The position numbers were made by a program, and so were the translations under genes. From Eutreptiella sp. 'Long Island Sound 2002' (taxonomy: Eukaryota > Protista > Euglenida), in NCBI GenBank assembly GCA_964036045.1, contig OZ038379.1, positions 5,890,001-5,954,000 on the forward strand: a stretch of DNA of 64,000 nucleotides, read 5' to 3'. The notes beneath the pieces were generated by a model that was not told the origin of the DNA, searched no databases, and worked only from the letters and a program-made list of their open reading frames with translations. Shown here piece by piece: positions 1 to 28,400 of the stretch (its first letter is position 1; each line of letters starts with the position of its first letter).

Positions 1-3000
1 GCTGAGTCATAGTGGAAGCTTCAAGGGGTCTGTGTATGGCGCGTGGAAAGGCGTGGACAGACCAGGGACATGTGTGTCCTGTCGACACAGATGGATTTCT
101 TGGTGGACTTGGACTCAGTGGAGTGGGTGGAGGGAGGGGGGGATATGGGAATCCAAGCATGCTACGCCCCCGCACCCCTTCCTCGCCCCATGACATTGGC
201 TTTGGCATTGGCTGATTGGCTTTGAACCCGGCGTGAGGGGTTGCGGGCAGCGTTGAAAACCTGGTGTGTGACCATGACATGGATTTCTAAGTTGTCGAGT
301 CGGACACGGAAAGGTGCCCTCCCCCTTCACACACCGTATGCGAGCTGACCCCTGCTGGTGTCCCTCCTCTTCATGTGGGGTTTTTCGTCGTGCCTATGGC
401 GACCCAAAAAGGGCTGGGGCTGGGGTCAATCCCTTCTTTGGCTTTGCAACGAACCCCCAGGAGCACCAGCGTCCTGGACTTTAATGGTCTAGTGCCCTTT
501 TTAACATTGGTCTCCCCTTCCCGTACCCCCCCCCCCCCCCGCCCACCCCACCTTTGTGGCCAATGCGCTGTACATACCCGAATCACACCAATACTGTTGC
601 AGTGGAAATGATGATTGTGCCCCACCTTTGTGGCCCACCGTGCCCCACCACGACTCACTGGAGGTGTGCACAGGTATGCAGCGGTGTGCAGAGGTGTGTA
701 GGGTGTGCAGGGCTGTGCAGAGGCGTGTAGAGGTGTGCAGAGGTGAGCCTAAAAACACAACAACATGCCCACCCATCTGGATTACGATCATTGTTATTGT
801 TGATTAATTCCACCATGTTCACTACAAACTTTCACCAAACTTCGTCCCTGCTTATGTCCATGGACGGGCGACGATCATAGTTGTCCGCTTTACGGTCAAG
901 CCTTTCTGTTGCCGTCATTTGGACTGCACTTGTACAAAGCTGCAGCTAGCACCCGGTACAGTTTTGTGTTATGGGAGCTTCAAAGGTGCATGAACTGCCT
1001 CGCATTGGCCACCAAGAACGAATAATCGCGGATTCTCCCTCACTTCCTCCTTGCAGCATCAACTCCCTCCTCAACAGGGTCAAGCAAGCCAAATCCCTAA
1101 GAACGGCTAGCTTGTCAAGGAAGGGGACAGCAAAACCCATTCCACATATCCCATAGTTGAGCCACCAGGGCACGTGCTGGTGGGTTATCACTCAGGGCGG
1201 CATGCTGTTTTCATTGTGATGTTCCCGGATAAAATGGCTGACCACTTACCAAGGTGCTACCTGTGATGTCAATGGACAAACCGCCATCGTTAGTGAGGTG
1301 CTTGTGTGGTTGCAAACTTTGGGCTTTAGGAAGCCTTGATTTTGATTCAAGCAGCCGCTTGAGACCGGTCTTGTCCGTTGGATTCCTTCCGCCTTGTTGC
1401 ACCCATTTCACGTAACTTAAGCGCAATTGAAATCATGCCATCACAACCGGTATTCTTAATGCACTGCAGGAGGTGTCCTTGGTTGTCATTCATGGTTCAA
1501 ACACCGAAAAAAAAATAGATACTCAGAAAGTGCGTGTGAGGCGGGGGGGGGGGGCGTGGATTGGGGCAACCTCCATGCGATCATTTATTGCAGCAACGCC
1601 ATCGGCCACAATGGCCAGCTTGTAATTGGCCAGCTCGCGAATGGCCAGTCAAACGTGATTTGGATTTCATTAGGCAGTGCTTGTGGAAGAGAAGTCACCC
1701 GCAAGGTCCGCAGTGAATGGGCACCACTACTTTGATGGCCCTTTTGCATTTGGTATTGTGCGGTGGGACTCTAGAGTGGTACCGTGAAAGGGGATGTAGT
1801 GGAGGTTTATGAAGCCAAGGCTTGATAGAAACTTGTTGTGACATGCAAATAAAAAAAGGGTCCGTACCCCCTCTAGGCTTCCACAACAGAGGATGCAATG
1901 CGCCATTGCAACGAGGGGTGATGCATCTGTGCATGGCACTATGGGAATGCCGCGCACACGGTGCGCATGCACTGCAAAAGTTTTGTATGTGGGCAACTAC
2001 TTGAACCCTAGTCTTGGCCCCTTTTCACAAGTTTGTTGTTCCATAACAGGTTTTTTTACGCTTCTTGTGCATTGAGGATGTGGCATATTTGAATTGCCGC
2101 CCATTTTCACCCATTTTCAACCATTTTAGCCCATTTTCACCTGGTTTTGCAGCACATTCATTGTTGAGGTGATGATGGGAATTCACTGGACGTCGTGTAC
2201 ATTCACAATGCAACAAATCGGCAGGTGGGTTGTTACACACTCCTTAGCGGATTCCAACCTTCGTGGCCATTGTCTTGCTATCTCTAGGAAACAATGTCCT
2301 TTGTGGATTCTGGGACCCTCGCCGACCCCCGAATATGACGATGTGGATTTCACTGTGCCTGCGAGGTGGGGAAGGGAAGCACAAACATTAAACCCTGCAT
2401 CCGCACTCTCAGATCATCGCAAATCAGTACCAAGGCTTATTAGTAATAACCCACATAGTGCTGCATATTCCTACAAGTTGGGTCCCAATCGGGTCAAGGC
2501 AGAATGTCTATGTGCCCAAAAGGCTGCCACCATCTCCCAACACACCCACACACCAACAGATTGCACTTGGCCACAGCCACCAACCACCAAGGATATGAAG
2601 ACCCTTGTGATGCCTGCATAAATGCACGGTGGTTTCCTCCCTTTCTCCTGCACGCAGTGCAACAACTTGGCCTGTGCCTCAGTCTGGGGCCTGCCAACCA
2701 TCCCACCAGGCGTGTACCAAACAATTGTGCAACGGTCGGACAACGACCGTGCAGTATGTGTGTGGGCCACAATGTACACATGCTGATGTGGAATCAATGT
2801 TCGACTCTTCAGGCATGCTTTTAAGATACGCTGTGCTGTGCTAGGGCAGGGCCTACTTCCTGCCTTGACGATTAAATGGATGTGACCAATGCTCGCAAAG
2901 TGGTGTTGGTACGGTGCATTGGGAGGTGAACACAGGTTGTACTTGGGATCCCTTTGCATGCAGTGCAATGTTTTGTACTACCGGAACTACTGGGACCGTA

Positions 3001-3934: not shown

Positions 3935-6187
3935 ATGAACCTTACTGCTTACACCAGATCAGTGACCCGAGCCCCAACCAGCCCTAATTTTCTTTCTGTT
4001 GTACAGACTGCCTTGCACAGCGTTGTCTTTTCATTTTCATTGCTTCATGGAATTATGTTGACTGCCAACAGCAATGAGAACTCCACGGAAGTGACCTGGG
4101 GTGCCACCAAGCTGCTCTCGTTTTGGAAGGACTTCCGGTTTTCATGTCCGTCGAAGGAGAGGGCTTTCCAGATGAGCCGGGCAAATGCGGCCAAGACCGT
4201 GTTTGTCTTCATCTGCCTGGCAGTCGCGGAGGGCTGGCAGTTTAGATTTGTTTCTAGCTCATGGTACTCATGGGTCGCTCTTTTGTCCGCGATTCCCATG
4301 TGTATTCTCCTCGTGGCGTCGCTGGTCCTGATCCGATGGTGGAATGCAGTCTCGCCCTATGCCTCACATATAATTTGCACGGTTATCATTGTGGGGGCTG
4401 TGGGCAAAATTGCGCAGTTGGTCATAGCATCGAATGATTTGCAGGCCAACGTTCGCCAAATTGCCGAGGGCATGAGCTCAGATTCGTTGGATACGACCAT
4501 AGCAGCGGTTGAACGTCACACAGCGGCAGCCATCTCTATGGTAGGCGGTCCGATCATGTCTGTTGTGGTGCAATGTTTGATGCTGCATGGCTTTCTGTAT
4601 ACGCGATGGATCCTGCTGACCAATTGTGTGCCCCCTGTGGGGGGCATTGTAGCAAGCTTCTTGGTTCCAAAGCTTTCTCCCGCTGTGTTTCCCCTTTTTG
4701 TCCCTTTGATCATGTTGTGGATCAACGTTTTGCACAGCGTTGCACAGCGAAAGCAGTTCTTGGCAGAGAGCAGACAAAGAGAGACACAAGCGTTACAAGC
4801 CGAACTGAGGCATGCACAAGCAGATGTTGAATCCGACAGCATCCTCAACCACCACCTCAAGAACATCGTGGCGGAGGTGAAAGGTTGCATTGAAACGTTC
4901 CTGGAGGATGGCACCGCAGATGAGCTCTTGCAGCGGGCCTTAGAGCGGCTGCAGAGTGGAATTAAATGGTGCAAGAATAGGCTTGTTCTGATCCGAGTGG
5001 TTTCCACTGAGTACGTCCCGCAGCTGACATCGGTGAACCTTGCAACATTTGTTGAAGGTCTGATCTCCGGCCGGCAAATGCCGCATGTCACATTCCCTGA
5101 CCAGTCCGTATGGATGGACGAGAGCCTGTGTGCATTTATGTTGGAAAATGTGATTGTCAACGCGCTTCGACATGGACATCCTGAAGGGCCTGCCGTTTCC
5201 CTGCACATTGATCTGCAGCCCAAGCCCAGCACTGCCGAACATACAATTACGTTCCGGGTGACGAATCGTGCAGATCCAGCCAAGCCTCGGATTACACCCG
5301 AGTTTTGGCGGCAAGCCTCCGAAGGCAACCATCAGGAGCTGAGGCCTGGTGGGCTATCTGATGGCCTTGGACTGAGCCACATATTCATGATTGCTGAAAG
5401 GCTTGGTACCGTAGCCTCACTAACTCAAGCAGAGGGTGACGACACAGTGGTTTTTGCGGCCTCTATGCCTGTCCGAGTCAGCGATGACCGTCGCATAAGC
5501 GTTTCAAGCACTGTTGTGCCAGAGCAGCCCGTGCCGTCCGCGATACAGCAACGGCCCTGGAACCTTCGCTTCTGCTGTGCCGATGACAGCCCACTTGCTC
5601 GGAGGCTATTGGACGTCAACCTCAAGCGTTATTTTCAGGGAAGTTGTGTGGAAATGTTCGGGGCAACCAAAGACGACTTGGAGGGCTTTGCGGAGGCCGC
5701 CATGGCACTGGCTGATGTCGTCATCCTGGATCAAAACATGGAGTACGGGCCAACAACGGTACGCGGCACGAACCTCTTGAAGCAGCTGACCGCCCTTGGC
5801 TTCGGGGGGCTTTGCTGCATCAGATCCGCCAACACTTCGGCTGACGACAGGGCGTTGTACACATCGTGCGGCGCGCACCTCACATTGGACAAGGGCCTCA
5901 GCTTCAGGGATATGGCATTGTGCCTTCAAAATGCATATGTCGAGCATGTGGCTTTTTCCGCTCCAACTACTATGTCTGCTGGCAGCAGCAGTTGCAGCGT
6001 CCGCAGCGATCGCCCCAGCAGCGCTAGCCCCTCTGGCGTGCTGAACAACGTAGGGACACCGAGGCAGGTGTGGGGACAGGGATGCAGCCGTGGCATCGCT
6101 GATGCGGTGACACCGAGGCAAGTGTGTGTGCAGGGTGGTAGGCCCGCGGACAGCGAGGCGGGTGTGTCAGCCGGCAGCTGTGGTTGA
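3935..6187 (+). CDS. Membrane-bound hybrid sensor histidine kinase / response regulator; likely true start ATG at 4055
   Basis: 750-codon open frame with about 6-7 hydrophobic segments, an H-box (SDSILNHHLKN), N-box (ENVIVNALRHG), G2 box (SDGLGLSH) and a receiver domain (ADDSPLARRLL, VILDQNM phospho-Asp, IRSAN, LDKG). Confidence 0.85.
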   Translation: MNLTAYTRSVTRAPTSPNFLSVVQTALHSVVFSFSLLHGIMLTANSNENSTEVTWGATKLLSFWKDFRFSCPSKERAFQMSRANAAKTVFVFICLAVAEGWQFRFVSSSWYSWVALLSAIPMCILLVASLVLIRWWNAVSPYASHIICTVIIVGAVGKIAQLVIASNDLQANVRQIAEGMSSDSLDTTIAAVERHTAAAISMVGGPIMSVVVQCLMLHGFLYTRWILLTNCVPPVGGIVASFLVPKLSPAVFPLFVPLIMLWINVLHSVAQRKQFLAESRQRETQALQAELRHAQADVESDSILNHHLKNIVAEVKGCIETFLEDGTADELLQRALERLQSGIKWCKNRLVLIRVVSTEYVPQLTSVNLATFVEGLISGRQMPHVTFPDQSVWMDESLCAFMLENVIVNALRHGHPEGPAVSLHIDLQPKPSTAEHTITFRVTNRADPAKPRITPEFWRQASEGNHQELRPGGLSDGLGLSHIFMIAERLGTVASLTQAEGDDTVVFAASMPVRVSDDRRISVSSTVVPEQPVPSAIQQRPWNLRFCCADDSPLARRLLDVNLKRYFQGSCVEMFGATKDDLEGFAEAAMALADVVILDQNMEYGPTTVRGTNLLKQLTALGFGGLCCIRSANTSADDRALYTSCGAHLTLDKGLSFRDMALCLQNAYVEHVAFSAPTTMSAGSSSCSVRSDRPSSASPSGVLNNVGTPRQVWGQGCSRGIADAVTPRQVCVQGGRPADSEAGVSAGSCG
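3984..4006 (+). promoter_or_regulatory. Candidate 3' splice / trans-splice acceptor upstream of the kinase ATG
   Basis: CTAAT branch-point-like motif at 3984, pyrimidine tract and TACAG ending at 4006, 48 nt before the in-frame ATG at 4055. Confidence 0.5.
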
Positions 6188-6809: not shown

Positions 6810-8000
6810 TCAACAGTCAACACCAAGCTTAAATTTCCTGATGAGGTGAACCATGTCACGGTCAGTGATTGCTTGGATGAGGTTTGCCGTAGTTTTCACA
6901 TCGACCCTGCTGATGTGCGTTAGTTTGTACATGACTCACCGCCCTATATGTCTGCAGCAGCTGAGTGCTTCATCAAAGACAAGGGGTATATCAATTGTGT
7001 TCACCTCCCCTGCTGGCCGCACTTGTTTGCAAAGGTGCCTGAGGCTGTCTTTGACGCCAGTGTACTGAATTCCACAGGCTTGTCCAATTGTTGTTTGCAC
7101 GGTCACCATTTTGGCGCACCAAATGGTATCGTTATCAGAAGGCAGCTTTTAAAAAATGGAAGGACGTTCATGAGCAGTTGTCTGATGAACTGAAGCAACG
7201 ACACGAAAAAGAGAGGCCAGCCCCTGTTAAGAGTGTTGTGCGCCCAACGGACGCCAGGTGGGCCTCCCAATTTGATGCATATAAATATTGGCGGGGGCGC
7301 ATTTCAGCTTTTAAAAAGTTTCCGAGTGAAGTTCCTAGTGACTGATGCAGTTCGTTAAACAGCACTCAAGGTGCAGATTGCATTCACCTGCGAATCCATG
7401 CAGCCAATATATGACCTAATTCTGAGTTTTCAAAAGCAGACAGGTGGCCCAGCCGATCCTTTGGGTGCACTAAATGACATTAAGAGCGCACAGGCTGAGG
7501 TCATTCGTGGCAAATTTCCCCCTGGCGTACAGAAATTGCTCAGTGCATGTCCAGCTCCACAGGCTGCTGCTCAGAGCAAGGTTTTGCAACAGGCAGCCAC
7601 AGTGATGTCCAGCAAGGTGGATAATCTGCATGCAAAGACTATCAAAGGGCGAGGCAAGACTCAGGCGGCATTTAATTGTTTCAACCCAGAACTGCTGCCG
7701 ACCAAAGAAGTGATGTCTTATTCTGAGTTGTGTAAACACATACCCAATGTGCCACAATCTGAGTGGGTGCGGTATATTGCTCTGCCAGCCCCGAGCCCTC
7801 TGCCGGATTCTACTGCAGCCAGAGTGGCATGGTGGCATGCCAAAAAAGACGATTTTCCTACATTGAGTAGCATTGCTGTTTTCTTTGTCCGATGACCATG
7901 TTGAGCGAACGTTCAGTTTGGTGGGCCACATCCAGACAAAGGACCGTTTGCATATGGGCCACAACACTTTGCGCCATTTGGCTATGATGTATGTCAACAA
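6810..8000 (+). pseudogene. Degenerate, N-terminally deleted hAT-superfamily transposase
   Basis: FVHDSPPYMSAAA (catalytic-D region, 6924), CxxH motif HLPCWPHL (~7000), and the C-terminal dimerisation domain WWHAKKDDFPTLSSIA...HVERTFSLVGHIQTKDRLHMGHNTLRHLAMMYVN; split by stops and frameshifts. Confidence 0.8.
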
Positions 8001-8095
8001 ACCCACTACAGACGATCCCAGGTTTCCCCAGAAACCCCAGTTTGGCATCACTGCCTCTCTTATCCATAGTGTGCAGTATATTTTTTTTTGCTGCC

Positions 8096-8353
8096 ATGAT
8101 CGTCCTCAAGTTCAGCGGCACGTCGGTCGGGAACCCCACGAGCGTCCAACAGGTGATCACGCTGATCAAGCGCAGCGATGCTGCGGAGATGGCCAAGGCC
8201 AATGGGCGCCATATCGCCGTCATCTTCTCGGCGCTTGCGGGCGTCACCAACCATCTCCTGAAACTGGGGCAGACGGCCGAGGATGGCGGGGACTGGGAGC
8301 AGGAGTTCGCGGCTCTGACCCAGCGCCGCCTCGACGCCATCACGGAGCTGGTG
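8096..8353 (+). pseudogene. Aspartate kinase N-terminal fragment (captured)
   Basis: MIVLKFSGTSVG...VIFSALAGVTNHLL matches the aspartokinase KFGGTSV and SA-x-x-x-x-TN-x-L motifs; only about 86 codons present. Confidence 0.8.
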
Positions 8354-8379
8354 GCAGCACCGCAGCAGCCCCGCGTGTG

Positions 8380-8673
8380 CGCCCACGTCACGGACATGCT
8401 GCACGTCAAGACCGCTGTCAACCCCGTCGACATCAACGTGATGGCCGGTGCACTGGTGGACGCCGGATGGGCCATGCCGCTCCCGTTCTCCTTGGGCTAC
8501 GACTCTTCCGGCGTGGTCGACAACTTCCATGCGGACGATGTTGCGGGCGCGTTCAAGGCTGGCAACGCGGTCTCTGCCGTGAACTAGGAGCAGCACAAGC
8601 ACGACGAAAAGGGGCTGCCCACCGGCGGTGCCTTTGCGCAGTACATCACGATCCCGGTCGCGTCCGTGGTGCA
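8380..8673 (+). pseudogene. MDR-family (quinone oxidoreductase / Zn-ADH-like) N-terminal GroES-fold fragment
   Basis: AVNPVD...PLPFSLGYDSSGVV...FKAGNAV...GGAFAQYITIP; same frame as the aspartokinase piece, with one TAG at 8585. Confidence 0.75.
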
Positions 8674-8719
8674 CACCGACATCGCTGCGCGGGAGAAGCA
8701 GACGACTGCCCTGGCCGCG

Positions 8720-9130
8720 GACACACTTGCGACCAACTTGAAGTACAACGGCTTGGGCAGTAGCAGTGCACGGGCGCTCATGGCGCTGAGGGGTGCCCTA
8801 TCGCTGCGCGCCCTCTCGCCCGACCTCGGCGGGCACGGCGTTGGCAATGACGGCATCCACGCGATCGCGGATCTGCAGGGCGCGGCAGGGCTGTACATGT
8901 TGATCATCATCCTGGTGGAAAACAAGCTGACCGGCATCGCCGTGCGAACCATCGCAGCGCTGTAGGAGAGGCCCGCGCTGCGCAACATGGCCATCTACAC
9001 CCGGGGCAACAACGACAACGAGGCCGCGTGGCACACCCTCGTGGCGCTGACGGAGCCCCCCTCGCTGCACACCCTGATCCTCGATCCCGAGTCCCCGCGC
9101 CTCAACGACCAGGGCCTGTGCGCGTTGCTG
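8720..9130 (+). pseudogene. RNI-like leucine-rich-repeat fragment
   Basis: Repeated units NLKYNGLGSSSARAL, DLGGHGVGNDGIHAI, ILVENKLTGIAVRTI, PSLHTLILD; same frame, TAG at 8963. Confidence 0.6.
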
Positions 9131-9480
9131 TGGGAGGCACTGCTGTGCCACGTCGGCGTGAAAGAGCAGGTGCCGTTGGGGTCGGAGCGACGCCCCGACG
9201 GAGGAGGATTAGACACCGACGGTGCCGCAAGCGCACCAGCCAGGGATCCGATGGGGACTGCACGAGATTCGCCCCGGCCACTCCTGAAACTGCGGCTCCG
9301 TGGGCGACTCAGCAGCGGCCGCTTAACCCCCGGCGCACACAGCTTCGCCGCCTCCGCAGCCTTCGCAAGCGCCCCCACTTCGGCCACCTTTGCCAGCACC
9401 ACTACCGCAAGTCCAGTCGCCCACACCGATGCTGCCCCCGCTGCCCCAACCGGCCCCAACTCCGACCGAGTGCAAGGCGC

Positions 9481-9708
9481 TTTCCAGTGTACGTGCGCGG
9501 CCTGGACACGATGTTCGTGCTGCACCTGCTCCCCCATGAACGCGTCCGGAATGTGAAGAACATGGTTCAGCGCAAACTCAAAGTCCCCTGGAGGCACCAG
9601 CGCCTGCTGCACGGCAACACGCCACTTGCCGACAACCACGCCATCGCCGCCTACGACGTGCAGCGGAACAGCACAATTACCCGCGCGCTCTATCTGCGCG
9701 TTGGAGGC
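9481..9708 (+). pseudogene. Ubiquitin-like domain 1 (76 codons, ends LRVGG)
   Basis: FPVYVRGLD...VRNVKNMVQRKLKVPWRHQRLLHGNTPLADNHAIAAYDVQRNSTITRALYLRVGG is colinear with ubiquitin. Confidence 0.8.
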
Positions 9709-10272
9709 CCCGGCGACGGCACCACAGGGGTCCGTGCCAGCTGCTGCTGGGCACTGGACCTGGAGGCCGGGACACTCTGCCCAGCAGTGCTGTCCCACCG
9801 CGCACAGACCTCGGCACCGGCAGCGCGCTGGACAGCCCGCTGCAACACCAGCGCCCACGATAACATCTGCGACATCCACGAGCTGCAGGCGGCCCTACCG
9901 CAGCCCAGCAAGTGCACCCAGACTGCGGAGTCACTGCAAAGCACGATGCGAGCCCGGATACTCCAGTCGAAGGCCGACGTACGGGCGCGACACCGGGGGA
10001 AACCCCCAACACCGGGAGCGGCCCAACCAACGCCACCGGTGGAGCTGGAGACCGCGCACGCGCCGGCAGCAAATGCCGTGATGCGCACTGTGCTGAAGGG
10101 TCTGGCACTGGGGGCCCCGCGACTGCTGGTGGACGTGGCGGTCATGGGTGACACACCGGCCAACATCGGGCACCACAACCACGACGTCGGCCATGCAGTG
10201 ACCACGACGACGCGCGGCACCGGGACAGGGGCAAACGGCGCGGCCACCCATGGTACAGGCCGCACGCGTACA

Positions 10273-10506
10273 CACCAGTTCTTCGTGCGAGCGGACGCGG
10301 GGCACATCATCACCATCTGTGTCCAAACCTGGGACGCCCTTGTACGCGACATCCAGGTGCACGTCCACAACAAACTGCGCGCCCGGGCCCAGCGGCACAG
10401 GCTGGTGTTGGCGGGCAAGCAGCCGACCCGCGGTGAATGCACCGTGGCTGAATATGGTATCGGGGAGGGGTCAACCCTCGACTTCCTTGGCCGCCTTTGT
10501 GGCCGA
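10273..10506 (+). pseudogene. Ubiquitin-like domain 2, directly fused to Gag
   Basis: HQFFVRADAGHIITI...RLVLAGKQ...TVAEYGIGEGSTLDFLGRLCGR followed immediately by ATG at 10507. Confidence 0.8.
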
Positions 10507-11862
10507 ATGCCGGCAAAAGGCGACGTAACGAACGGGGACGCCACCATGACGCCTGCGGAGGGCGGCCCCAGCGTTGCCGCAGCATCTAACTCCTCCCTCC
10601 TCGCATGGGCAAAATGGGTGCGCGGCCCATACCAGGCCCCACTCAATAGTGCCCATTTTGAGCAGCAACTCCACAAGTGGGAGCTCGCCAGCCTGGAGGC
10701 CCTCACAAAGCAAGAGGTGCCAGAAGGGGCGGTGGCAGCCATGACGACGCGGGCAGGCCTAGCCCTAACCACGGAAGAGGCCACGCATGCCATGGCGGCG
10801 TACAAGGGGCGACGCCACCTACAGCCCGACTTCATTGCCGGAGTCTTCCACCGCGTGCCTAGCAGAATCACTGATGAGAGCGCAATAGCCCAGGGCCAGG
10901 GGGCAGTGCCCACACAACCGCACCCGACGGTACTGAAATGAGCACGCTGGGTCGCAGGCCCGTACGCTGCCATTGCGGGTCACAACACCTATGCGCACGA
11001 CTTGGACAGACGGGAGGTCGACTTCGAGGAGTACGTGATGGAGGTCGAGGCCACGACAGAGCAGCTCGGCGCATTGGTGGCGGCAGCGGGCCTGGACCTC
11101 AATCGGACGGCGGCAGTACGGGCCTTGGGCGCCTACGCTGCCCGCAAATCCCTCCGACCGGACCTACATGAGCTCCGCTTCACAGGTGTCCCGGCCGCAG
11201 ACGGAGCGGGCGCCACGACGGGTGACAACGCCACAGGCCAAGGCCGGATGCGTGAAACTGTGGCACTGCTCTCGGCCCAGAAGCGGGAGGTAGAGCAGAT
11301 GCGCCAGTCCCTCATCCCACCACTCACCCAGGTAGCGGTAGACCGCTTCCTCACGGAGGCCCTGCCATATGCTTGGATGACCTCCTTGGCGGCCTGCCTG
11401 AAAGAACTCTCCCTCGAGGACCCCACTGGTGCTTGGGCCAAGCAGCCACTTCCGTCCACTGTGTGGCGCGTCCTCAATGAGGGACTCCGCGCCAAGAGGC
11501 AGGGCCGTCCATCAGCCCCAGCGCTGACAAACCAACCCGGGCTGCCAGGGCAGATGGCACCATTGCAGCACCAGGTGATGGCGACTGGATCGGGCACCGT
11601 GTGCTTCAACTGCGGCAGTCGAGGGCACATCGCGCGCATGTGCCCACGGAAGGCTCTTGGGGGCCAAGTTCAGCAAATGGGACTCCACACCTTGTGGGTG
11701 CATCACAACCAAGCCTACGATATGAACGCACCACTGCCAGCCCCATGCAAACGATGCGGGCAGATGCATTGGGCACGGTTCCCGTGCCCCCAACCTCAGT
11801 CGGGGACGATCACCAACCCCACCACACACCAGCCCAGCAACCGCAAGCGCACAGGGGGCTGA
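10507..11862 (+). pseudogene. Gag-like ORF with CCHC zinc knuckle
   Basis: One frame with a single TGA (10939) at a position where the paralogous motif has Trp; knuckle CFNCGSRGHIARMC and a second CKRCGQMHWARFPC. Confidence 0.7.
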
Positions 11863-13021
11863 CTGGAGTGCGACCTTGCTGCAACTCCTCCAGCAGCAGC
11901 ACGGGGGGCAGCCACCGTCAGCTTGAACCGCCGTCCCCCCGCCCCCCCAACCCCCCACCCCGCACCACCAAGCCCCAGTGGCTGGCCAAGGAACAGCCAC
12001 CGTGGCAGACGCATGGGGCGCGTACCGCGAGGCGCTCAAAGCAGGCATCCGCGATAGCCTCGCAGACACCCTGGCGTGCGCCGCAAGAGCCTTCGCCAAG
12101 GGCACAAGGGACACATACCTCTGCGCTGTGCGCAACACCCTCATGGGCAACGCCGACGACACCGATCTGCAGTTGGCCATCGATAGCCGCCTCTTGCTCC
12201 TTGGGCACCGCAAGCGCGGCGGATCAGTGGCACGCAACACCGTCTCCGGATTCCAGATGCTGGCCAAACTGCAACTCCTCCCAGAGGTGGTTACCGCGCG
12301 AATGTGGCTACAAGTGCGAGCAATCGACAAAGGCACGGCGCACCTGGCCAAACCCCGAATCTGGGCGACAGGGCAAGACCTTGAGCGGCTAGGAAAGTGC
12401 AGGCACCACTGGGCCTGGGCCAGGACATTCTTCGCCGTGGCCTGTGCCGGTGTGTTTGCCCTTCGGGTTGGCGACGTTGGCAGCTTCACCTGGGACGGCA
12501 TCAGCACCCCAGGGTTCCTCACTTTCTGGGATCAAAAGGTCAATGCCGGGTGGGTTACCTTGCCCCTCAGCCCGTTCTTGGACCGCTGGAGGGGCTACAT
12601 CTACCGATTCCGCCGACCATACCAACTGCCGACCACCCCCATCCTCCTCGCATCCCGGTGCCTCCACGACATTCTGGAGGGCACACCCAGCGCCCACATC
12701 ACCTGGCACCCGTGGAAACGATTTGCTGCCGCGGCGTACATCTGGCTTGGGGGAAACACAGTCGGCCTCCAGCAATGGGCCTGATGGAGATCCCCCAGGC
12801 AGGCCTGCCACTACGCACGCCACCCCCCGACGTGGACACTTCCAGAAACAATGTGCTTACCCCTCCCTGCAAGGTTCACAGGCTCGCCGGCACGGGACCT
12901 TGACTACGGCATTATCTGCGCGCGGGACGTATGGCCACGAGAGGCGTGGGCGCCTACCGCAGCGCGAGCACCGCGACGGACGCCCCCGCCAGCACACGTT
13001 GTCGGCAACGCACACCTCTAA
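11860..13021 (+). pseudogene. Tyrosine recombinase of a DIRS-order retrotransposon
   Basis: AFAKGTRDTY N-terminal motif, LRVGD (catalytic R), DQKV (K), WHPWKR (HxxR-like), and QQWA*WRSPRQACHY (W and catalytic Y); TGA at 12782 is plausibly CGA>TGA. Confidence 0.8.
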
Positions 13022-14379
13022 AACGACGACTCATCCTGCTCAGGGGAGGAGTCGGTCGGTCACAGTATCCAGCGCCATCCGAGCCCTCCGCCGCAACCCC
13101 AAGCAGATGACCAGCCTGAAGATGCAGCGACTACGTGCCGAGAAATGGGGCACACGGACGACGACCGCACTGAGCTGCGTGGTACGGCAGATCACGCGCC
13201 ACCTGCCCACGCACGGCGTGACAGTGACGACATGCAATCAGCCAAAGACGGTCCCACAACCAATGACGGGGACCAAGCAGTCACCCAGACAACATTGGTC
13301 GATGCTGGCACCAGCCCTTATATCACTAGCGACGCTCCCAGAACCACAAACAACAGCACGATGGTCAGCCACGACGTTGCCACAGGCACTGACCACAGTG
13401 CACGAAGTCCAGATGCGCACCTGGCACCACCACCGCACCATGCAGCCCCCCCCCCCCCCCCCCAGGATCTCAGCCAGACGTCGACCGCCGCCTTTTCTGG
13501 ACCCCGCGGCCTGAATCACCGCCCCCGAGACCCTACCGCACGAGTTCATCGCCTGGACAAACCACGCCGGGCGCACCTGGACCTGTGCGGACTCCGGACG
13601 TTGACGACATGCCCATCGACGAAGCGGAAACGGGGACGCAAGCGGAAGACACGTCGAGCTCCAGCAGCCCAGCCCCAGACCCCGTCCCAGCCTGCACCCA
13701 TCAAACCCCTCACGCAACTCGCCCACAAAGCAAGCTCGACCAGATGGCCGGAGCACACGCTACCGACGGCGAACCCGCAGGCCCCACCGCCACAGCCATC
13801 GCGCTCCAGCCACAGCCGCCAGCGACCGAACGCCGCCACAAACGGCAGCACGTGCCCACGGCAGAGACCCCAGTGCCACACCGAAAAATACGACCGGCAT
13901 GTCCGCAGCTTACTCACACAGCCGAGGCCGCAGGGCCCAATGCACAGCCCGATAACGCTCCAGCACGGCCAGACCACGCCCCATTTTGGGGGTATGACCT
14001 CCTCGCGCCTCGGAAAGGGACAAGGTTCCTCCAGTGGCACCCAGGACCCATGCCACTGTCACCGGTGGACCGCACCGGATCAGCAGGGCGCTTTGACGGC
14101 ACTGCAGGACACCCTGAGCAAGGCGGCCCATCGCATGTCCATGAAGGGACCGAGAGTGAGCACCATCCTTCCGTTGCTGCAGGACATGGCCATGCTCACC
14201 ATGAATTGGGCGTGGGACACAAACACATGGTTGGGGAGTACTGACCACCTGTGCGCTATCATGGCAGTGCTCGCTGATCGCGACCCTCGGGAAGACGACA
14301 TCTCGCCCATTAGTGACACTAGCCCCCGCCCCAAGCAGCAACCCGGTGAGACCCTGCCCCTGCATGTGGCCAGCAAGGG

Positions 14380-15858
14380 GATAGGGGCGGCGGGCTCCAT
14401 ACCGATCAACCCCGAGGTGTGGAACAAGCACCTCCCGTGCGACATGAAGCGGGCACTCCTAGTGGCGCCCGACTTGGGGGACTCCGACGACAAGGCCCTG
14501 GCTGTATGGGCACACGCCATGCACAGGGACGGACTGCTGATCCGTTGCCACCACGGCACGGCTGCCAACATGCGCGCCTTTCCCAAGCCTAAGTCGCAAG
14601 AAAAGGGGGCACTGATCGCCGACCTCCGCCTCCTCAATGCGCTCATGGGGAAACCACCACGGCCGTTCGAGCTCCCCAGCATGGCGCAACTGGCTGCCCT
14701 CCTTGAACTCTTGAAGGCACACAACGTCAAGGCATTCTTTACCAAACTTGACGTCTCCAACATGTTTTGGTCCGTATTACTCCCGCCTGAGCACTCTACC
14801 AGCTTCCGCTTCCGGGTGCAGGGGGTCACATACGCCATCCCCAGCCTACCTTTTGGTTGGACGGCCAGTCCCAGCATGGCGGTGGAAGTGCTGGCGGCCT
14901 ACCTCACCCTTCACTTTCCTGGGGAAGTGATCCTCATCCAGCATGTTGACGATGTCTTGCTGTTCTCTGCTGACCGGGAACGCCTCCGGCTGGAAACGAG
15001 CCTGCTCACAGATGAACTCCGCGCTGCAGGTTGGATCATCAGTGCCAAGTCCCAAGTAGAGCCGACCGCCCATATTACATGGATGGGTAAACACCTGGAT
15101 GGAAGCTAGTACTCCTTGAAGCAGTCCGCAGAGTACATGGCCACGGCCACGGCCATGTGGGTGAAGCTGGCCACTAAGGGCTATGACCAAACGCACTATG
15201 CGCCGCCTCTGCGGAAAGCTGATTTGGGCCCCCCGGCCTGGGCGCGGTGCTATGCCGTTCCTTAGTGGGGCGCTTGCATGGCTAAACTGGGGCCCCAAGC
15301 AGTCCAAGTACACCCCGCCGGCAGTGCTACGTGGGCTTATGGAGGCGCTTGCCCTTGGTATCACTCCGTGGAAAGCACCGCCAAATCTGAGCCCGACAGA
15401 GGAGACTTGGTACGTAGACGCAGCATATGACGACTCCCGTTGGACTGCTGCTCTATGGACCCCGGGCCGCGGCATGCGCATCTCGAGGCTACCGACATGG
15501 GTGGCCACCCAACAGGGGGCTAAGCTCGCTGCAATTGAAATGGCCACCAAGACGGCGGCCTACGAGGGGCTGACGCAGCTCCACCTGGTCGCCGACAACA
15601 TGTCAGCCATCTGGTCCACCATCAGGAACAAAAGCAGCACTGCTAGCCCGGCGCGGGCTCGGCACCTGAGGCGGATCGCACACACCCTCCGCTGGTCCCG
15701 CCTCAAGATGCGCATCAGTTGGATCGCTTCACGGTTTAATCCAGCTGACTGTCCTTCCAGGGTGTCCACTTATGATTCCTTTGTGCATATGGCGGCGGAC
15801 GCGGAGGCCACGTACCGTGCCCTGCAGCACTACCCCCTGCACGCTCCCAAACACATGG
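14380..15858 (+). pseudogene. DIRS-type reverse transcriptase and RNase H; last codons resume at 24864-24886
   Basis: RAFPKPK...LIADLRLLN, TKLDVSNMFW, SLPFGWTASP, QHVDDVLL, ITWMG; RNase H YVDAA, LVADN, SRFNPADCPSR; TAG at 15107 and a +1 shift near 15183. Confidence 0.85.
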
Positions 15859-16295
15859 TGTCTGGTGTCTGGTGTCTGAGTGCCTGGAACCGATTCCACC
15901 GGACGCACCGGATACGGCTGCCCCGGCCAGGCTGGGCTGGACGTCGCCACACCGCGGCGGGCGAAGCGTCCATCGCGTCGCTCTCGTCTCCCCCTCGGTC
16001 CCCCCCCCCCCGACCCCCAGTTCCCCGCTGCCATCGGCCGGACGCCACACGGCGCGGGCCGGAGGGGGGTGTGGGCTGTCTACCGCCTGCCCATGCACTG
16101 CACAGTGTTGGGACGCTGGCGGGCCTGGGACGCTGATCTGCAAGCACGACATGCACTGCACAGCATCCGGGCGTTCTCTGGTCGTGTCGAGTAGCGAGCC
16201 GCGGGTCCCTGCGCACGCAGGGCCGGCATCAGGCTGGAAGGGCGGTGTGACAGCGCACGCTGCAGGGACCTCTGCCCCTCTGTCGAGGTGCGTCT

Positions 16296-20795: not shown

Positions 20796-20894
20796 GATGG
20801 GGGGTGCGCGCTTGAAATGGACACAAAAAGCATGTTGGAGGAGCAGCTGGGGAACATGGGAGACGATGGCGGCAGTGTGCGGGTACGGGCGGGC

Positions 20895-24149: not shown

Positions 24150-24550
24150 GCACATCTGGTGCATGCCAGCTGCCACACGGCAGAGCCTGGGCCCCAGAGC
24201 CGTCCATAGCCGCACGGCGTCACGGGTGGGGGTTTCCTGGCTGGGGTATGCGCACACCTGGTGTCAGGTGTCTGCCACACGGCAGAGCCCGGGCCCCAAA
24301 GCCGTCCATAGCCGCACGGCGTCACGGTTGGGGGTATCCTGGCTGGGTTGGTGCACACCTGGTGTCTCGTTGCTGCCGCACGGCAGAGCCCGGGCCCCAG
24401 AGCCGTCCATAGCCGCACGGCGTCACGGATGGGGGTATCCTGGCTGGGTTGGTGCACACCTGGTGTTTTGTCGCTGCCCTACGGCAGAGCCTGGGCCGCA
24501 GAGCCGTCCATAGCCGCACGGCGTCACGGTTGGGGGTACTCTGGCTGGGG
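24150..24550 (-). repeat. About four ~101-bp tandem monomers in the LINE 5' UTR
   Basis: ccgtccatagccgcacggcgtcacgg recurs at 24200, 24302, 24403 and 24504. Confidence 0.9.
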
Positions 24551-25071
24551 GACCGCACGATCCCAGTGTATACTAAAAAAAAAAACCGGCTCTTGGTCAC
24601 GCACGTGACCGTGGGGACGAAAAGGGGCCATGTTGTTTCATGGCCAGGAGGCAGGAGGAGGGCCCTGATCCTCCCCGGAAGTCCTTGCGTTGCGCACTGT
24701 TTTCCCTCCCCCCCCCTGCTGGTGGTCACCGCACGGTGCCCCTCCAGTGCGGTCTGCCCCGCACGGGACACCGCAGTGTCGCCGAGCCTTGCGACTGGTG
24801 TTTTCCTCCTGGCGCCCCGGTCGCACGACCACCAGGGGGACTCCCGCGGTCCCAAACACATGGGATGGGCCCACCATCGGGGCTAGTGCTCGTCCCTTAT
24901 CCCAGGGGCGGGGGGGCGGTTCCTAGCTCGCTCAGTCTCCTGTCTTTGCCCGCGAGCTGCTGCTCTTCATTTCACCTTCTTTTTATTTTCTGGTTCCAGT
25001 GTCGCTGGATCACCTCGCATGGTGTTTTCTGCCCCCCCCCCCCCCCCCCCGCTGCCCTCTTTCTTGCACTT

Positions 25072-25401
25072 CCGCCTGGCTGACCAGGGCAGGCAACTGC
25101 ACCCGCGGTTCCCTCACCCACGTACCCCATCCCTGCTGCTCTCTGTGGCTGGCACACCGCGTGCCCCAAAAAAGCCTAAGCTACTTACACTAGACGGCTC
25201 TCCGCTTCCGGTGAAACGTCTTAATTTTGGCGCACAGGCATCACCTCCGCAAAAAATGCTTCACTGTACTTTACATAGTGGAGCACCCCAACCAAGAAGG
25301 GGACACGTGCATTGATTGGACTTCGCAGTACTGCTGGACTAATGGCTGGAATTGTCTATGGCGGGGACATTCAGTCTATCGGAACCGACCATTGATCCCC
25401 C
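25072..25401 (+). mobile_element. Short (~330 bp) retroposon-like insertion
   Basis: Flanked by the 13-bp direct repeat ctttcttgcactt (25059-25071, 25402-25414); ends in the same ...gaccattgatcccc 3' end seen at ~53310 and ~59850. Confidence 0.5.
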
Positions 25402-28400
25402 CTTTCTTGCACTTTGCTGCGGCCGGAGAGCATCGGCGGCCGTGGCAGTTCCTAACCGGGGCCGCGCGCTCCCGCCCGTCATTTGGATTTCCGGTTTTCC
25501 TGTGCCCTGTCTGGAGGGCAGCGGAGCTTGGGCACCCAGCAATACCCCAGCTTGGCTTCGCTGCCTCTCTCTCTCTTTCCACTGTGTGCAGTATATTTCC
25601 CCCAGGTTCCCCCGAGCCCCCCAAAGACCCAGGGTGGCGGCACTGCCTCTCCTGTCCGATGTATCAGGTTTTGCGCATGCGCTACCGCCCGTCAGATGGG
25701 TGCTCGTCTTATACCGTGGCCTTGTCTTGCAGGCAGGGTGGATCCAGGGAACGTGCTGGGCCACGTGGCGCTGAACTGCGCTGTTGTCCCGGCCTTGCAC
25801 CGCTTCGGTCCGTATAAACATTATTGTCTCTTCCTGCCTTGCATTTGTTTGAAACTAACCGATCGCATGCGGTGGTGAAGGTTGCGCGCCCGTTACCATC
25901 TTTTCTCCAACCGTTGGCCGGTTGGCCCGCCTGTGGTTCCTCTATCCCTTCCCACATGCCACAGGTGTGGAATGCCACCCCAGCGCGCCTGAACCCTGCG
26001 TGTGGTATTTTATTCCCTCCCTGTTGTTGCTCCAGCTAGTTATAAATTACCTTTAGCGGCGCTGCCGCCAGTTGCGTGTGGCCGGTGGTGCTTTGTATCC
26101 ACTGGCGCTGTGGTTTCCGCGCCAGTTTACCACCCTCACACCCTCTTCTCCTCCTATTGTATGTTTCTCCCTGCTCTGTTTGAAACTAAACAGCAACTGA
26201 AGGGGACAGGCCGAATGAGTGCCATGCTATGCAGCCCAGTCAGTTTGCAAGTAGTACAATGAATGCAGTCCACACCTTATGGACGACTGCTATTTTATTG
26301 ATCCTGGTTGTTCTTTAGAGTCGGCAGAAAGGACAGGCACTCAAGTGACCCGCAGAGCTAACCGCAAAAAACGCTTCCCTGTACTTTACATAACGGAGCA
26401 CCCCAACCCAGAAGGGGACACGTGCATTGATTGGACTTCGCAGTACTGCTGGACTAATGGCTGGAATTGTCTATGGCGGGGACATTCAGTCTATCGGAAC
26501 CGACCATTGATCCCCCCTTTCTTGCACTTTGCTGCGGCCGGAGAGCATCGGCGGCCGTGGCAGTTCCTAACCGGGGCCGCGCGCTCCCGCCCGTCATTTG
26601 GATTTCCGGTTTTCCTGTGCCCTGTCTGGAGGGCAGCGGAGCTTGGGCACCCAGCAATACCCCAGCTTGGCTTCGCTGCCTCTCTCTCTCTTTCCACTGT
26701 GTGCAGTATATTTCCCCCAGGTTCCCCCGAGCCCCCCAAAGACCCAGGGTGGCGGCACTGCCTCTCCTGTCCGATGTATCAGGTTTTGCGCATGCGCTAC
26801 CGCCCGTCAGATGGGTGCTCGTCTTATACCGTGGCCTTGTCTTGCAGGCAGGGTGGATCCAGGGAACGTGCTGGGCCACGTGGCGCTGAACTGCGCTGTT
26901 GTCCCGGCCTTGCACCGCTTCGGTCCGTATAAACATTATTGTCTCTTCCTGCCTTGCATTTGTTTGAAACTAACCGATCGCATGCGGTGGTGAAGGTTGC
27001 GCGCCCGTTACCATCTTTTCTCCAACCGTTGGCCGGTTGGCCCGCCTGTGGTTCCTCTATCCCTTCCCACATGCCACAGGTGTGGAATGCCACCCCAGCG
27101 CGCCTGAACCCTGCGTGTGGTATTTTATTCCCTCCCTGTTGTTGCTCCAGCTAGTTATAAATTACCTTTAGCGGCGCTGCCGCCAGTTGCGTGTGGCCGG
27201 TGGTGCTTTGTATCCACTGGCGCTGTGGTTTCCACGCCAGTTTACCAACCTCACACCCTCTTCTCCTCCTATTGTATGTTTCTCCCTGCTCTGTTTGAAA
27301 CTAAACAGCAACTGAAGGGGACAGGCCGAATGAGTGCCATGCTATGCAGCCCAGTCAGTTTGCAAGTAGTACAATGAATGCAGTCCACACCTTATGGACG
27401 ACTGCGATTTTTTTGATCCTGGTTGTTCTTTAGAGTCGGCAGAAAGGACAAGCACTCAAGTGACCCGCAGAGCTAACCGCAAAAAACGCTTCACTGTACT
27501 TTACATAGTGGAGCACCCCAACCAAGAAGGGGACACGTGCATTGATTGGACTTCGCAGTACTGCTGGACTAATGGCTGGAATTGTCTATGGCGGGGACAT
27601 TCAGTCTATCGGAACCGACCATTGATCCCCCCTTTCTTGCACTTTGCTGCGGCCGGAGAGCATCGGCGGCCGTGGCAGTTCCTAACCGGGGCCGCGCGCT
27701 CCCGCCCGTCATTTGGATTTCCGGTTTTCCTGTGCCCTGTCTGGAGGGCAGCGGAGCTTGGGCACCCAGCAATACCCCAGCTTGGCTTCGCTGCCTCTCT
27801 CTCTCTTTCCACTGTGTGCAGTATATTTCCCCCAGGTTCCCCCGAGCCCCCCAAAGACCCAGGGTGGCGGCACTGCCTCTCCTGTCCGATGTATCAGGTT
27901 TTGCGCATGCGCTACCGCCCGTCAGATGGGTGCTCGTCTTATACCGTGGCCTTGTCTTGCAGGCAGGGTGGATCCAGGGAACGTGCTGGGCCACGTGGCG
28001 CTGAACTGCGCTGTTGTCCCGGCCTTGCACCGCTTCGGTCCGTATAAACATTATTGTCTCTTCCTGCCTTGCATTTGTTTGAAACTAACCGATCGCATGC
28101 GGTGGTGAAGGTTGCGCGCCCGTTACCATCTTTTCTCCAACCGTTGGCCGGTTGGCCCGCCTGTGGTTCCTCTATCCCTTCCCACATGCCACAGGTGTGG
28201 AATGCCACCCCAGCGCGCCTGAACCCTGCGTGTGGTATTTTATTCCCTCCCTGTTGTTGCTCCAGCTAGTTATAAATTACCTTTAGCGGCGCTGCCGCCA
28301 GTTGCGTGTGGCCGGTGGTGCTTTGTATCCACTGGCGCTGTGGTTTCCACGCCAGTTTACCACCCTCACACCCTCTTCTCCTCCTATTGTATGTTTCTCC

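What the first reader, a model, noticed from the sequence alone, without database searches (positions are those of the whole stretch)
8096..9480. One reading frame stitched from three unrelated host genes in front of the element
Seen: aspartokinase N-terminus, MDR oxidoreductase N-terminus and LRRs follow one another in a single frame for ~460 codons with only two TAG codons (plausibly CAG>TAG) and no introns, then shift -1 into the Ubl-Gag frame. Inference: serial capture of spliced mRNA pieces by RT template switching, with the frame kept either by selection or by chance. That would make this a gene-shuffling YR retrotransposon.
Basis: partly seen in the sequence, partly recalled or inferred. 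Interest (0 to 1): 0.8.

Follow-up and report, generated by a model that had tools for sequence, protein, structure and literature searches.

The report
Host-gene mosaic inside a Euglena retrotransposon
A dead copy of a Euglena jumping gene carries pieces of three ordinary host genes joined in one reading frame, and a sister lineage carries other host pieces at the same spot; such capture is well known for other retroelements, but I found no report of it for this class.

Summary
Window 8091-9130 holds three host-gene pieces in one sense frame:
- 8091-8408 is exon 1 of an aspartokinase gene (94% to its parent on C23).
- 8409-8659 is codons ~37-123 of an MDR oxidoreductase (90%, parent on C8).
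- 8661-9130 is an internal stretch of an RNI-type LRR gene (82%, C11).

The mosaic lies inside a VIPER-like tyrosine-recombinase retrotransposon, not in front of it. It sits between an 80-nt terminal repeat (8014-8093) and the element's first ORF.

Capture was stepwise and recurrent. A sister copy on C10 has the repeat followed by the MDR gene from its own ATG, with no aspartokinase. An 860-bp fragment on C11 shares the junctions. Another subfamily carries an aldehyde dehydrogenase N-terminus plus a further fragment in the same slot.

The cargo frame matches the ORF1 frame. The shift to the ubiquitin-like/Gag frame is a 1-nt gap near 9263. Cargo now drifts neutrally (dN/dS about 1).

RNA-level capture is unproven, because no fragment spans a parental intron. 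The first junction has a 9-nt microhomology.

The scan had noted such elements elsewhere in this genome, but not cargo. I rate it a new variant of a known kind (Bs1, gag-onc).

The parts
8014..8093 (+). 5' terminal repeat (A1, 'leader') of the YR element; ends in a T-run
   Evidence: It is shared by all 5'-complete copies, while the DNA upstream of it is unrelated between copies. A 49-55 nt direct copy lies near the 3' end. The same ~75 nt occurs in at least 837 first-look places genome-wide.
8091..8408 (+). Fragment A: aspartokinase exon 1, from 5 nt before the ATG to the last exon base
   Evidence: It is 94% identical to C23:3432257-3432569. Pfam gives AA_kinase. The parent has later AA_kinase exons. 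Parent exon 2 aligns to PDB aspartokinase residues 102-141.
8400..8408 (+). A/B junction: 9-nt identity TGCAGGTCA between the two parents (now TGCACGTCA)
   Evidence: Alignment of the window, the C11 fragment, the C10 copy and both parents.
8409..8659 (+). Fragment B: MDR/quinone-oxidoreductase-like gene, codons ~37-123
   Evidence: It is 90.5% identical to C8:66369237-66369499(-). The parent ORF continues on both sides, and has ADH_N 2e-14 plus ADH_zinc_N.
8585..8587 (+). TAG private to this copy
   Evidence: The parent has TGG, the C11 fragment AGG and the C10 copy TTG.
8661..9130 (+). Fragment C: internal part of an RNI-type LRR gene
   Evidence: It is 82% identical to C11:11228179-11228648. 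The parent is a 678-codon open frame with LRR_6 at 1.8e-10.
8963..8965 (+). TAG shared with the C10 copy (TAA there), followed by a shared new ATG at 8987
   Evidence: The parent has AAG and CTG at these two sites.
9131..9188 (+). Filler of unknown origin, open in the cargo frame
   Evidence: It is shared only with the C10 copy and has no other match in the genome search.
9189..9480 (+). Element's own ORF1 N-terminal extension; a 1-nt gap near 9263 moves the frame
   Evidence: It is homologous to the ALDH-subfamily copies. Codon-phase counts show the Ubl frame constrained from about 9300.
9481..9708 (+). First ubiquitin-like domain of ORF1, ending in GG
   Evidence: Pfam ubiquitin 1.2e-11; coordinates.
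10273..10506 (+). Second ubiquitin-like domain, ending CGR here and CGG followed by Met in sister copies
   Evidence: Pfam ubiquitin 6e-4, below the cut-off; translations.
11002..11862 (+). Gag-like ORF with a CCHC zinc knuckle
   Evidence: zf-CCHC 9e-7.
11978..12784 (+). Tyrosine-recombinase-like ORF
   Evidence: The ten best language-model neighbours are all integrase clusters at 0.96-0.97. There is no Pfam hit.
13145..15861 (+). Reverse transcriptase and RNase H-like region, cut by a LINE insertion
   Evidence: RVT_1 7.4e-11. The C10 copy bridges 15861 to 24847. The LINE target duplication is at 15846-15858 and 24850-24862.
24847..25598 (+). 3' end of the element, including the direct copy (A2) of the terminal repeat at 25544-25598

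Best explanation
Window 8014 to about 25600 is one decayed copy of a VIPER-like tyrosine-recombinase retrotransposon of a euglenid. It is interrupted by a LINE.

A mosaic of three host-gene fragments sits between the element's 80-nt terminal repeat and the conserved start of its first ORF. That ORF consists of an N-terminal extension, two ubiquitin-like domains and a CCHC gag.

The mosaic was built in steps in an active lineage. An LRR piece and the 5' end of an MDR gene (from a few bases before its ATG) came first. Later, aspartokinase exon 1 replaced the first 36 MDR codons, through a crossover at a 9-nt identity. The product was then spread by transposition.

The most likely joining process is copy-choice (template switching) during reverse transcription between element RNA and host RNA. 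It would be guided by short identities: the T-rich end of the terminal repeat against the pyrimidine-rich tract just upstream of host start codons, and TGCAGGTCA at the A/B joint. Only in-frame, sense products would have survived, because the slot is translated as the head of ORF1.

The cargo has no function of its own and now drifts neutrally.

Shown: the anatomy, the parent genes, the order of steps, the recurrence and the neutrality.
Inferred: the RNA-level mechanism, the in-frame filter, and the idea that the ubiquitin-like GG sites make the slot tolerant of cargo.
For: -
- The same leader/A, A/B and B/C junctions occur in a second locus with different flanks (L002). The B and C pieces occur in a third (C10).
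- The C10 copy has the repeat followed directly by the MDR ATG.
- A sister subfamily has Aldedh cargo starting at an ATG right after the repeat, plus a second foreign piece.
- Element identity: RVT_1, zf-CCHC and ubiquitin by Pfam; YR-like ORF; terminal direct repeat.
- The cargo frame equals the ORF1-homologous frame from 9189 to ~9262.
- In L010 the ALDH cargo is in the ORF1 frame, and a C22 copy has a 925-codon open frame that includes cargo.
- dN/dS is 0.7-2.2 between element copies, against 0.34 between the two host MDR paralogues.
- There is microhomology at the A/B joint and T-rich overlap at the leader joints.
Against: - No fragment crosses a parental intron site, so RNA-level capture is not demonstrated.
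- The 9-nt identity at A/B includes 4 intron bases of the aspartokinase parent. A mature-mRNA template would leave only 6 nt of identity.
- No spliced-leader remnant lies between the repeat and the host 5' UTR pieces. Only the last 5-7 UTR bases are present, so the host RNA 5' end was not the crossover point.
- The B/C joint has no microhomology, only a single G.
- The window and C10 copies share a stop at 8963 and a frame offset near 9263. Their last common ancestor therefore may not have translated the cargo together with gag.
- The window's terminal repeat is 97-99% identical to the abundant genome-wide repeat but only 79% to its C10 sibling. The 5' block may therefore have come in by recombination with another repeat-bearing sequence.
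Confidence: 0.7

Rival explanations
1. The same mosaic was assembled at the DNA level. A break in an element copy, or in its DNA intermediate, just after the terminal repeat was repaired by synthesis that hopped between ectopic genomic templates. This is microhomology-mediated templated insertion, as in filler DNA or Pack-type capture. The product was then amplified by transposition.
For: - Each fragment matches contiguous genomic DNA.
- The full 9-nt identity at A/B exists only in the genomic or pre-mRNA form of the aspartokinase gene.
- The B/C joint is blunt with one extra base, which is typical of end joining.
- No spliced leader or poly(A) trace is present.
Against: - All fragments are sense and in phase with each other and with ORF1. 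Three independent first fragments (aspartokinase, MDR, ALDH) start within about 0-14 nt of a host ATG. Random templated repair does not predict this without the same selection filter.
- The aspartokinase piece stops exactly at the exon end rather than running into the intron.
Confidence: 0.22
2. The aspartokinase step was exon trapping by splicing. An MDR-bearing element sat downstream of aspartokinase exon 1. The exon-1 donor was spliced to a cryptic acceptor (TGCAG|G) inside the MDR cargo, and the chimeric RNA was retrotransposed. The SVA-F1 subfamily acquired MAST2 exon 1 in this way.
For: - Fragment A is exactly exon 1 and ends at CAG|GT.
- Fragment B starts exactly after a CAG in its parent.
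- The precedent is described in PMC6139936.
Against: - The terminal repeat still lies upstream of exon 1, whereas a spliced 5' transduction should replace the element's 5' end.
- Only 5 nt of 5' UTR and no spliced leader precede the ATG.
- Splicing does not require the extra identity (TGC upstream, TCA downstream) seen between the two parents.
Confidence: 0.1
3. The chimeric frame is a functional fusion protein, either a new host gene or an element accessory protein maintained by selection.
For: - The fragments are in-frame and sense, and start at a host ATG.
- The naive expectation of 10 stops in 461 codons compares with 2 observed.
Against: - dN/dS is about 1 or above between copies, with no third-position excess.
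- There are stops, one of them shared by two copies.
- The catalytic motif KFGGTS has become KFSGTS in the window.
- Each domain is truncated.
- Three other frames (+2, -0, -2) are equally free of stops.
Confidence: 0.03

Closest known systems
Bs1 LTR retroelement of maize (three host-gene transductions forming a hybrid ORF; reviewed in PMC13317346)
   Same: A retroelement carries fragments of three unrelated host genes, none full length. They are joined into one hybrid reading frame next to gag, and the product is multiplied by transposition.
   Different: - The carrier here is a tyrosine-recombinase (VIPER-like) element with a short split terminal repeat, not an LTR element.
- The cargo sits at the very head of ORF1, upstream of ubiquitin-like domains.
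- Here there is no sign of expression or selection.
Acutely transforming retroviruses with gag-onc fusions (my own knowledge)
   Same: Host coding sequence is inserted in frame with gag. Junctions show short or no homology, and read-through or co-packaged RNA plus copy-choice recombination is the accepted route.
   Different: - Here the host piece is upstream of gag and begins at the host start codon.
- The pieces are small, inactive domain fragments.
- No intron-loss evidence is available.
SVA-F1 subfamily, which acquired MAST2 exon 1 by splicing (PMC6139936)
   Same: A complete first exon of a host gene is joined at an AG acceptor inside a retroelement and then propagated.
   Different: In SVA-F1 the exon replaces the element's 5' end. 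Here the element's terminal repeat is still upstream, and the joint also has 9 nt of identity.
VIPER/TATE elements and SIRE of trypanosomatids (PMC6681497)
   Same: - The host is also a euglenozoan.
- The order is gag, then tyrosine recombinase, then RT/RNase H.
- There are short split direct repeats.
- A short, highly abundant repeat shares the element's terminal sequence.
   Different: - No host-gene cargo or ubiquitin-like domains are described for VIPER or TATE in that paper.
- Kinship of this family to VIPER was not tested by phylogeny here.
Pack-MULE, Pack-CACTA and Helitron gene-fragment capture (PMC13317346, PMC4224331)
   Same: These are mosaics of several host gene fragments inside a mobile element, with different cargo in sister elements.
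   Different: Those are DNA transposons. Their fragments often include introns and have mixed orientations. Here all fragments are sense, in phase, and placed in a translated slot.

Membership tests
Tyrosine-recombinase retrotransposon (order DIRS, VIPER-like) | Reverse transcriptase domain | tested here: met
   RVT_1 at 7.4e-11 in 13145-15106, and 8.2e-10 in the C10 copy.
Tyrosine-recombinase retrotransposon (order DIRS, VIPER-like) | Tyrosine recombinase ORF instead of a DDE integrase | tested here: inconclusive
   ORF 11978-12781 has only integrase clusters among its ten nearest language-model neighbours, at 0.96-0.97. Pfam and a PDB sequence search gave no hit. The catalytic residues were not verified.
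Tyrosine-recombinase retrotransposon (order DIRS, VIPER-like) | Gene order gag, YR, RT/RNase H | tested here: met
   zf-CCHC lies at 11002-11859, the YR-like ORF at 11978-12781, RVT_1 around 14600-15100, and a faint RVT_3 follows it in the C10 copy.
Tyrosine-recombinase retrotransposon (order DIRS, VIPER-like) | Split direct terminal repeats (A1 ... B1 A2 B2) | tested here: inconclusive
   An A1/A2 direct repeat of 49-55 nt was found in the window and in the C10 copy. The B repeats were not resolved. The 3' end runs into a 1115-bp tandem array.
Retroelement-mediated host gene transduction (Bs1-like) | Host-derived fragments lie inside the element's boundaries | tested here: met
   The terminal repeat is upstream and the conserved ORF1 downstream. 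DNA upstream of the repeat is unrelated between copies.
Retroelement-mediated host gene transduction (Bs1-like) | Complete parent genes exist elsewhere in the genome | tested here: met
   The aspartokinase parent has several exons on C23. The MDR parent has ADH_N plus ADH_zinc_N. The LRR parent is a 678-codon frame.
Retroelement-mediated host gene transduction (Bs1-like) | The chimera is propagated to several loci with identical junctions | tested here: met
   The window and C11:40.93 Mb share the leader/A, A/B and B/C joints. The C10 copy shares the B end and the C piece.
Retroelement-mediated host gene transduction (Bs1-like) | Cargo lacks parental introns (an RNA intermediate) | tested here: inconclusive
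   Every fragment lies within a single parental exon, so the test has no power.
Retroelement-mediated host gene transduction (Bs1-like) | The hybrid ORF is transcribed or translated | not testable with these tools
   No transcript or peptide data were available.
5' exon trapping by splicing (SVA-F1-like) | The captured piece is a complete first exon joined at an AG acceptor in the element | tested here: met
   The piece ends at the CAG|GT of exon 1, and the MDR part starts after TGCAG.
5' exon trapping by splicing (SVA-F1-like) | The host exon replaces the element's own 5' end | tested here: not met
   The element's terminal repeat 8014-8093 still precedes the exon, in both the window and L002.

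The most novel reading that the evidence does not exclude
This euglenid element family has a built-in cargo slot, which is the head of ORF1. The slot lies between a terminal repeat whose T-rich, acceptor-like end resembles the tracts just upstream of host start codons, and two ubiquitin-like domains that end in Gly-Gly. Host deubiquitinases would clip off whatever is translated upstream, so any in-frame host 5' exon is tolerated. The repeat's tail steers crossovers to host start codons. If so, the family would be a systematic shuffler of host first exons, including targeting peptides, rather than the victim of a one-off accident.
Probability: 0.22. Interest if true: 0.75.

Novelty: new variant of a known kind. 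Interest (0 to 1): 0.5.

Why it matters
Capture of host coding pieces is well documented for retroviruses, LTR elements, SVA/L1, Pack-type transposons and Helitrons. In my limited literature search I found no case for tyrosine-recombinase retroelements.

This family shows at least three independent captures that each start at a host start codon, at one fixed slot, with one intermediate preserved. That gives a small natural series in which to study how such elements recombine with host sequences. It may also show how ubiquitin-like modules let an element tolerate foreign N-terminal sequence.

The practical weight is modest. All copies seen are dead, and the cargo shows no sign of function.

Tried and rejected
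1. **Spliced-leader idea.** The T-rich end of the terminal repeat resembles the euglenid spliced leader, which raised the idea that the cargo came from trans-spliced mRNAs.
   - The parents have no AG directly before the first shared base.
   - The idea was dropped.

2. **The repeat as a known RNA gene.** Rfam gave no hit. The fold is weak, with z = -2.

3. **hAT remnant upstream.** My reading by eye of a hAT transposase C-terminus at 7873-8010 was not supported by Pfam.

4. **Pfam on the window's LRR pieces.** This found nothing. The LRR call rests on the parent.

5. **Intron-junction test.** It is uninformative, because every fragment lies within one exon.

6. **Stop-codon scarcity as evidence of selection.** Rejected, because frames +2, -0 and -2 are equally open.

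7. **Selection on cargo.** dN/dS and codon-phase counts show none.

8. **PDB sequence search with ORF 12444-13511.** No hit.

9. **Survey of the ~837 repeat-bearing loci for other cargo.** This was not possible.

10. **Spliced aspartokinase model.** The exons were searched one by one, and the joined sequence was not built or searched.

11. **Big protein searches.** Not used, because the family scans had already settled the proteins.
Full report
**What is there**

- Pfam finds AA_kinase (6.4e-6, residues 1-153 nominally) and ADH_N (7e-5, residues 105-160) in the first stop-free piece, 8096-8584. It finds nothing in the next two pieces.
- A ubiquitin domain (1.2e-11), a CCHC knuckle and RVT_1 follow downstream.
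- The region from 8001 to about 25000 is 61-69% G+C, against about 50-56% in the surrounding DNA.
- The window is C2:5890001-5954000 of a 2.28-Gb genome. Earlier notes of this scan call it a Euglena.
- A relic of the euglenid spliced leader lies at 1506-1529(-).

**Parents of the three pieces**

A DNA search of the genome splits 8096-9480 into blocks that occur separately elsewhere.

Block A, 8091-8408:
- It is 94% identical to C23:3432257-3432569.
- That locus has the canonical KFGGTSV motif, where the window has KFSGTSV.
- It has a later AA_kinase exon 7 kb downstream.
- An intervening exon aligns to residues 102-141 of solved aspartokinases, and exon 1 covers residues 3 to about 100. I searched the exons one by one and did not join them.
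- Block A is therefore exactly exon 1, from 5 nt before the ATG to the last base before the GT of intron 1.

Block B, 8400-8659:
- It is 90.5% identical to C8:66369237-66369499(-).
- It lies inside a 297-codon open frame with ADH_N (2e-14) and ADH_zinc_N.
- A decayed paralogue lies at C11:2.54 Mb.

Block C, 8661-9130:
- It is 82% identical to C11:11228179-11228648.
- It lies inside a 678-codon RNI-type LRR frame with LRR_6 at 1.8e-10.
- The parental reading frames of B and C continue on both sides of the captured stretch, so their ends are not exon edges.

**Junctions**
- Leader/A: the T-run that ends the terminal repeat abuts CTGCC-ATG. The parent has a pyrimidine tract there, so the crossover lies in T-rich overlap.
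- A/B: both parents read TGCAGGTCA across the joint. In the aspartokinase gene the last four of these bases are the start of intron 1.
- B/C: blunt, with one extra G.
- C/next: LRR homology stops at 9130. 9131-9188 has no match other than the sister copy. Homology to all other family members starts near 9189.

**The mosaic is inside the element**
- Copies on C1, C10, C12 and C25 share 8014-8093 and then, after 0.76-1.1 kb, the ubiquitin-like/Gag region.
- The DNA upstream of the 80-nt block is unrelated between copies, so the block is the element's 5' end.
- A 49-55-nt direct copy of the block lies near the 3' end, at window 25544-25598 and at 17104-17152 of the joined C10 region (C10:35277103-35277151).
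- The C10 copy bridges the LINE insertion and shows that the window element resumes at 24847. The target duplication is visible at 15846-15858 and 24850-24862.
- ORF 11978-12781 has only integrase clusters among its ten nearest neighbours by protein-language features, at 0.96-0.97. Pfam is silent on it.
- The order is gag, YR-like, RT, RNase H-like, with a short split repeat.
- The 80-nt block itself is very abundant. There were 837 first-look candidates, and the 40 places scored were 91-99% identical to it, many of them in tandem arrays. The 1115-bp array at 25247 to about 38000 carries a look-alike in each unit. By analogy with SIRE this may be a non-autonomous derivative of such elements. 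That is inference.

**Stepwise and recurrent capture**
- The C10 copy is 85-91% identical to the window over the core. It has the terminal repeat followed, after six bases, by the MDR gene's own ATG. It then has the MDR sequence contiguous with block B as in the parent, and no aspartokinase. It also holds the LRR block from 8795 on, within a derived inversion.
- The window and an 860-bp fragment at C11:40.93 Mb share the leader/A, A/B and B/C joints, including a derived G-to-C change inside the 9-mer.
- The simplest order is LRR and the MDR 5' end first, then aspartokinase exon 1 replacing MDR codons 1-36. Identity to the parents fits this loosely (82%, 91.5% and 94%).
- A second subfamily (L010, L011/L012, L013, L015, and places on C8 and C22) has different cargo in the same slot. 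An ATG lies right after the repeat, followed by a presequence, an aldehyde dehydrogenase N-terminus (Aldedh 1.5e-18, profile 7-106), and a further fragment with its own matches elsewhere.
- At least three independent captures therefore begin within about 0-14 nt of a host start codon.

**Frame and selection**
- The two TAGs derive from TGG (8585, private to the window) and AAG (8963, shared with C10 as TAA). Neither derives from CAG.
- Three other frames (+2, -0 and -2) also have only 2-3 stops, so stop scarcity reflects composition and coding ancestry.
- Between element copies dN/dS is 0.7-2.2. There is no third-position excess in either subfamily's cargo. The two host MDR paralogues give 0.34.
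- The phase relations are nevertheless not random:
  - A, B, C and the filler are all in one phase.
  - That phase is the one homologous to ORF1 of the ALDH subfamily from 9189 to about 9262.
  - The window lacks one base near 9263 relative to that subfamily, and C10 lacks seven. This is what puts the ubiquitin-like/Gag part in the next frame.
  - In L010 the ALDH cargo is in the ORF1 frame, apart from one stop and a private 1-nt gap.
  - A C22 copy has a 925-codon open frame containing cargo residues 131-208.
- I infer that only sense, in-frame captures were propagated, because the slot is translated as the head of ORF1. After capture the amino-acid sequence did not matter.
- Both ubiquitin-like domains end in Gly-Gly in several copies, the second followed by Met. 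Cleavage there would free gag from anything upstream. This is inference, not shown.
- One caveat applies. The stop at 8963, a new ATG at 8987 and the frame offset are shared by the window and C10 copies. Their last common ancestor may already have uncoupled the cargo from gag, or have been moved in trans.

**Mechanism**

Every fragment seen lies within one parental exon.
- The aspartokinase piece ending exactly at the exon boundary fits splicing, as when SVA-F1 acquired MAST2 exon 1 (PMC6139936). However, the terminal repeat is still upstream of the exon, and the two parents share more identity than splice signals need.
- The 9-mer is complete only in the genomic or pre-mRNA form. The mature mRNA would share 6 nt.
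- No spliced leader and only 5-7 nt of host 5' UTR are present, so the crossovers were internal, in T-rich overlap.
- My ranking:
  - copy-choice during reverse transcription with host RNA, possibly unspliced, is first;
  - DNA-level templated repair is second;
  - exon trapping by splicing for the aspartokinase step is third.
- The window's repeat is closer to the abundant genome-wide repeat (97-99%) than to its C10 sibling (79%). This hints that the repeat-plus-exon-1 block came in by recombination with another repeat-bearing molecule.

**Comparison and verdict**

The closest precedent is maize Bs1. It is an LTR element with three host-gene transductions in a hybrid ORF (PMC13317346). Retroviral gag-onc fusions are a further precedent (my own knowledge).

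This case differs in three ways:
- the carrier class is a tyrosine-recombinase, VIPER-like element;
- the slot is fixed at the head of ORF1, before ubiquitin-like domains;
- host start codons are taken repeatedly.

I found no report of host-gene cargo in this class in the searches I ran. That is a limited library, not proof of absence.

All copies examined are broken and the cargo is neutral. I rate this a real and tidy example of a known process in a new carrier, of moderate interest.

Noticed in passing
window 8014-8093; genome-wide places listed: The element's 80-nt terminal repeat is a very abundant sequence. There were 837 first-look candidates, and the 40 places scored were 91-99% identical to it. 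Many lie in tandem arrays with spacings of about 560-940 bp. It may be a SIRE-like non-autonomous derivative. It contains a pyrimidine tract plus CAG that looks like a trans-splice acceptor.
   Followed up: partly
window 25247 to about 38000: This is a tandem array with a 1115-bp period (some units about 1107 or 1165 bp). Each unit holds a 55-nt look-alike of the terminal repeat followed head-to-tail by a second partial copy. TRF missed it because its longest period is 500.
   Followed up: partly
window 9481-9708 and 10273-10506: ORF1 has two ubiquitin-like domains. The first ends LRVGG. The second ends RLCGG followed by Met in sister copies (CGR here). They look like host-protease cleavage sites that would release gag.
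   Followed up: partly
window 8963-8989; C10 copy (L036 around 600-1040, reverse strand): The window and C10 copies share a nonsense change (parent AAG) and, eight codons later, a new in-frame ATG (parent CTG). ORF1 may have been restarted inside the LRR-derived segment.
   Followed up: no
L030 9434-10000 and L036 1-1022 (C10:35269433-35271021): In the C10 copy the segment equivalent to window 8795-10227 is inverted. A 175-bp piece that lies at 13635-13809 in the window sits inside the inversion and is missing from its window position.
   Followed up: no
G000:C22:14031196-14031814 and G000:C2:166080140-166080322: A C22 copy of the ALDH-cargo subfamily has a 925-codon open frame that includes cargo. 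A C2 locus matches only the presequence and the first ALDH residues (5-69, 64%), and could be exon 1 of the true ALDH parent. Neither could be fetched.
   Followed up: no
L002 (C11:40933396-40934219, reverse strand): This 860-bp fragment of the mosaic has a branch about three times longer than the window copy's, measured from their common ancestor (12% against 6% from the aspartokinase parent). It also has a 38-nt deletion.
   Followed up: no
window 15846-15858 and 24850-24862: The 9-kb LINE that splits the element's RNase H-like region is flanked by a 13-nt target duplication, CCCAAACACATGG.
   Followed up: partly
There is also a 66-nt fragment of large-subunit rRNA (Rfam 54.9 bits).
   Followed up: no
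window 3935-6187 (+): This 750-codon ORF has weak HATPase_c and Response_reg matches, both below Pfam's cut-offs. It may be a hybrid histidine-kinase-like gene.
   Followed up: no
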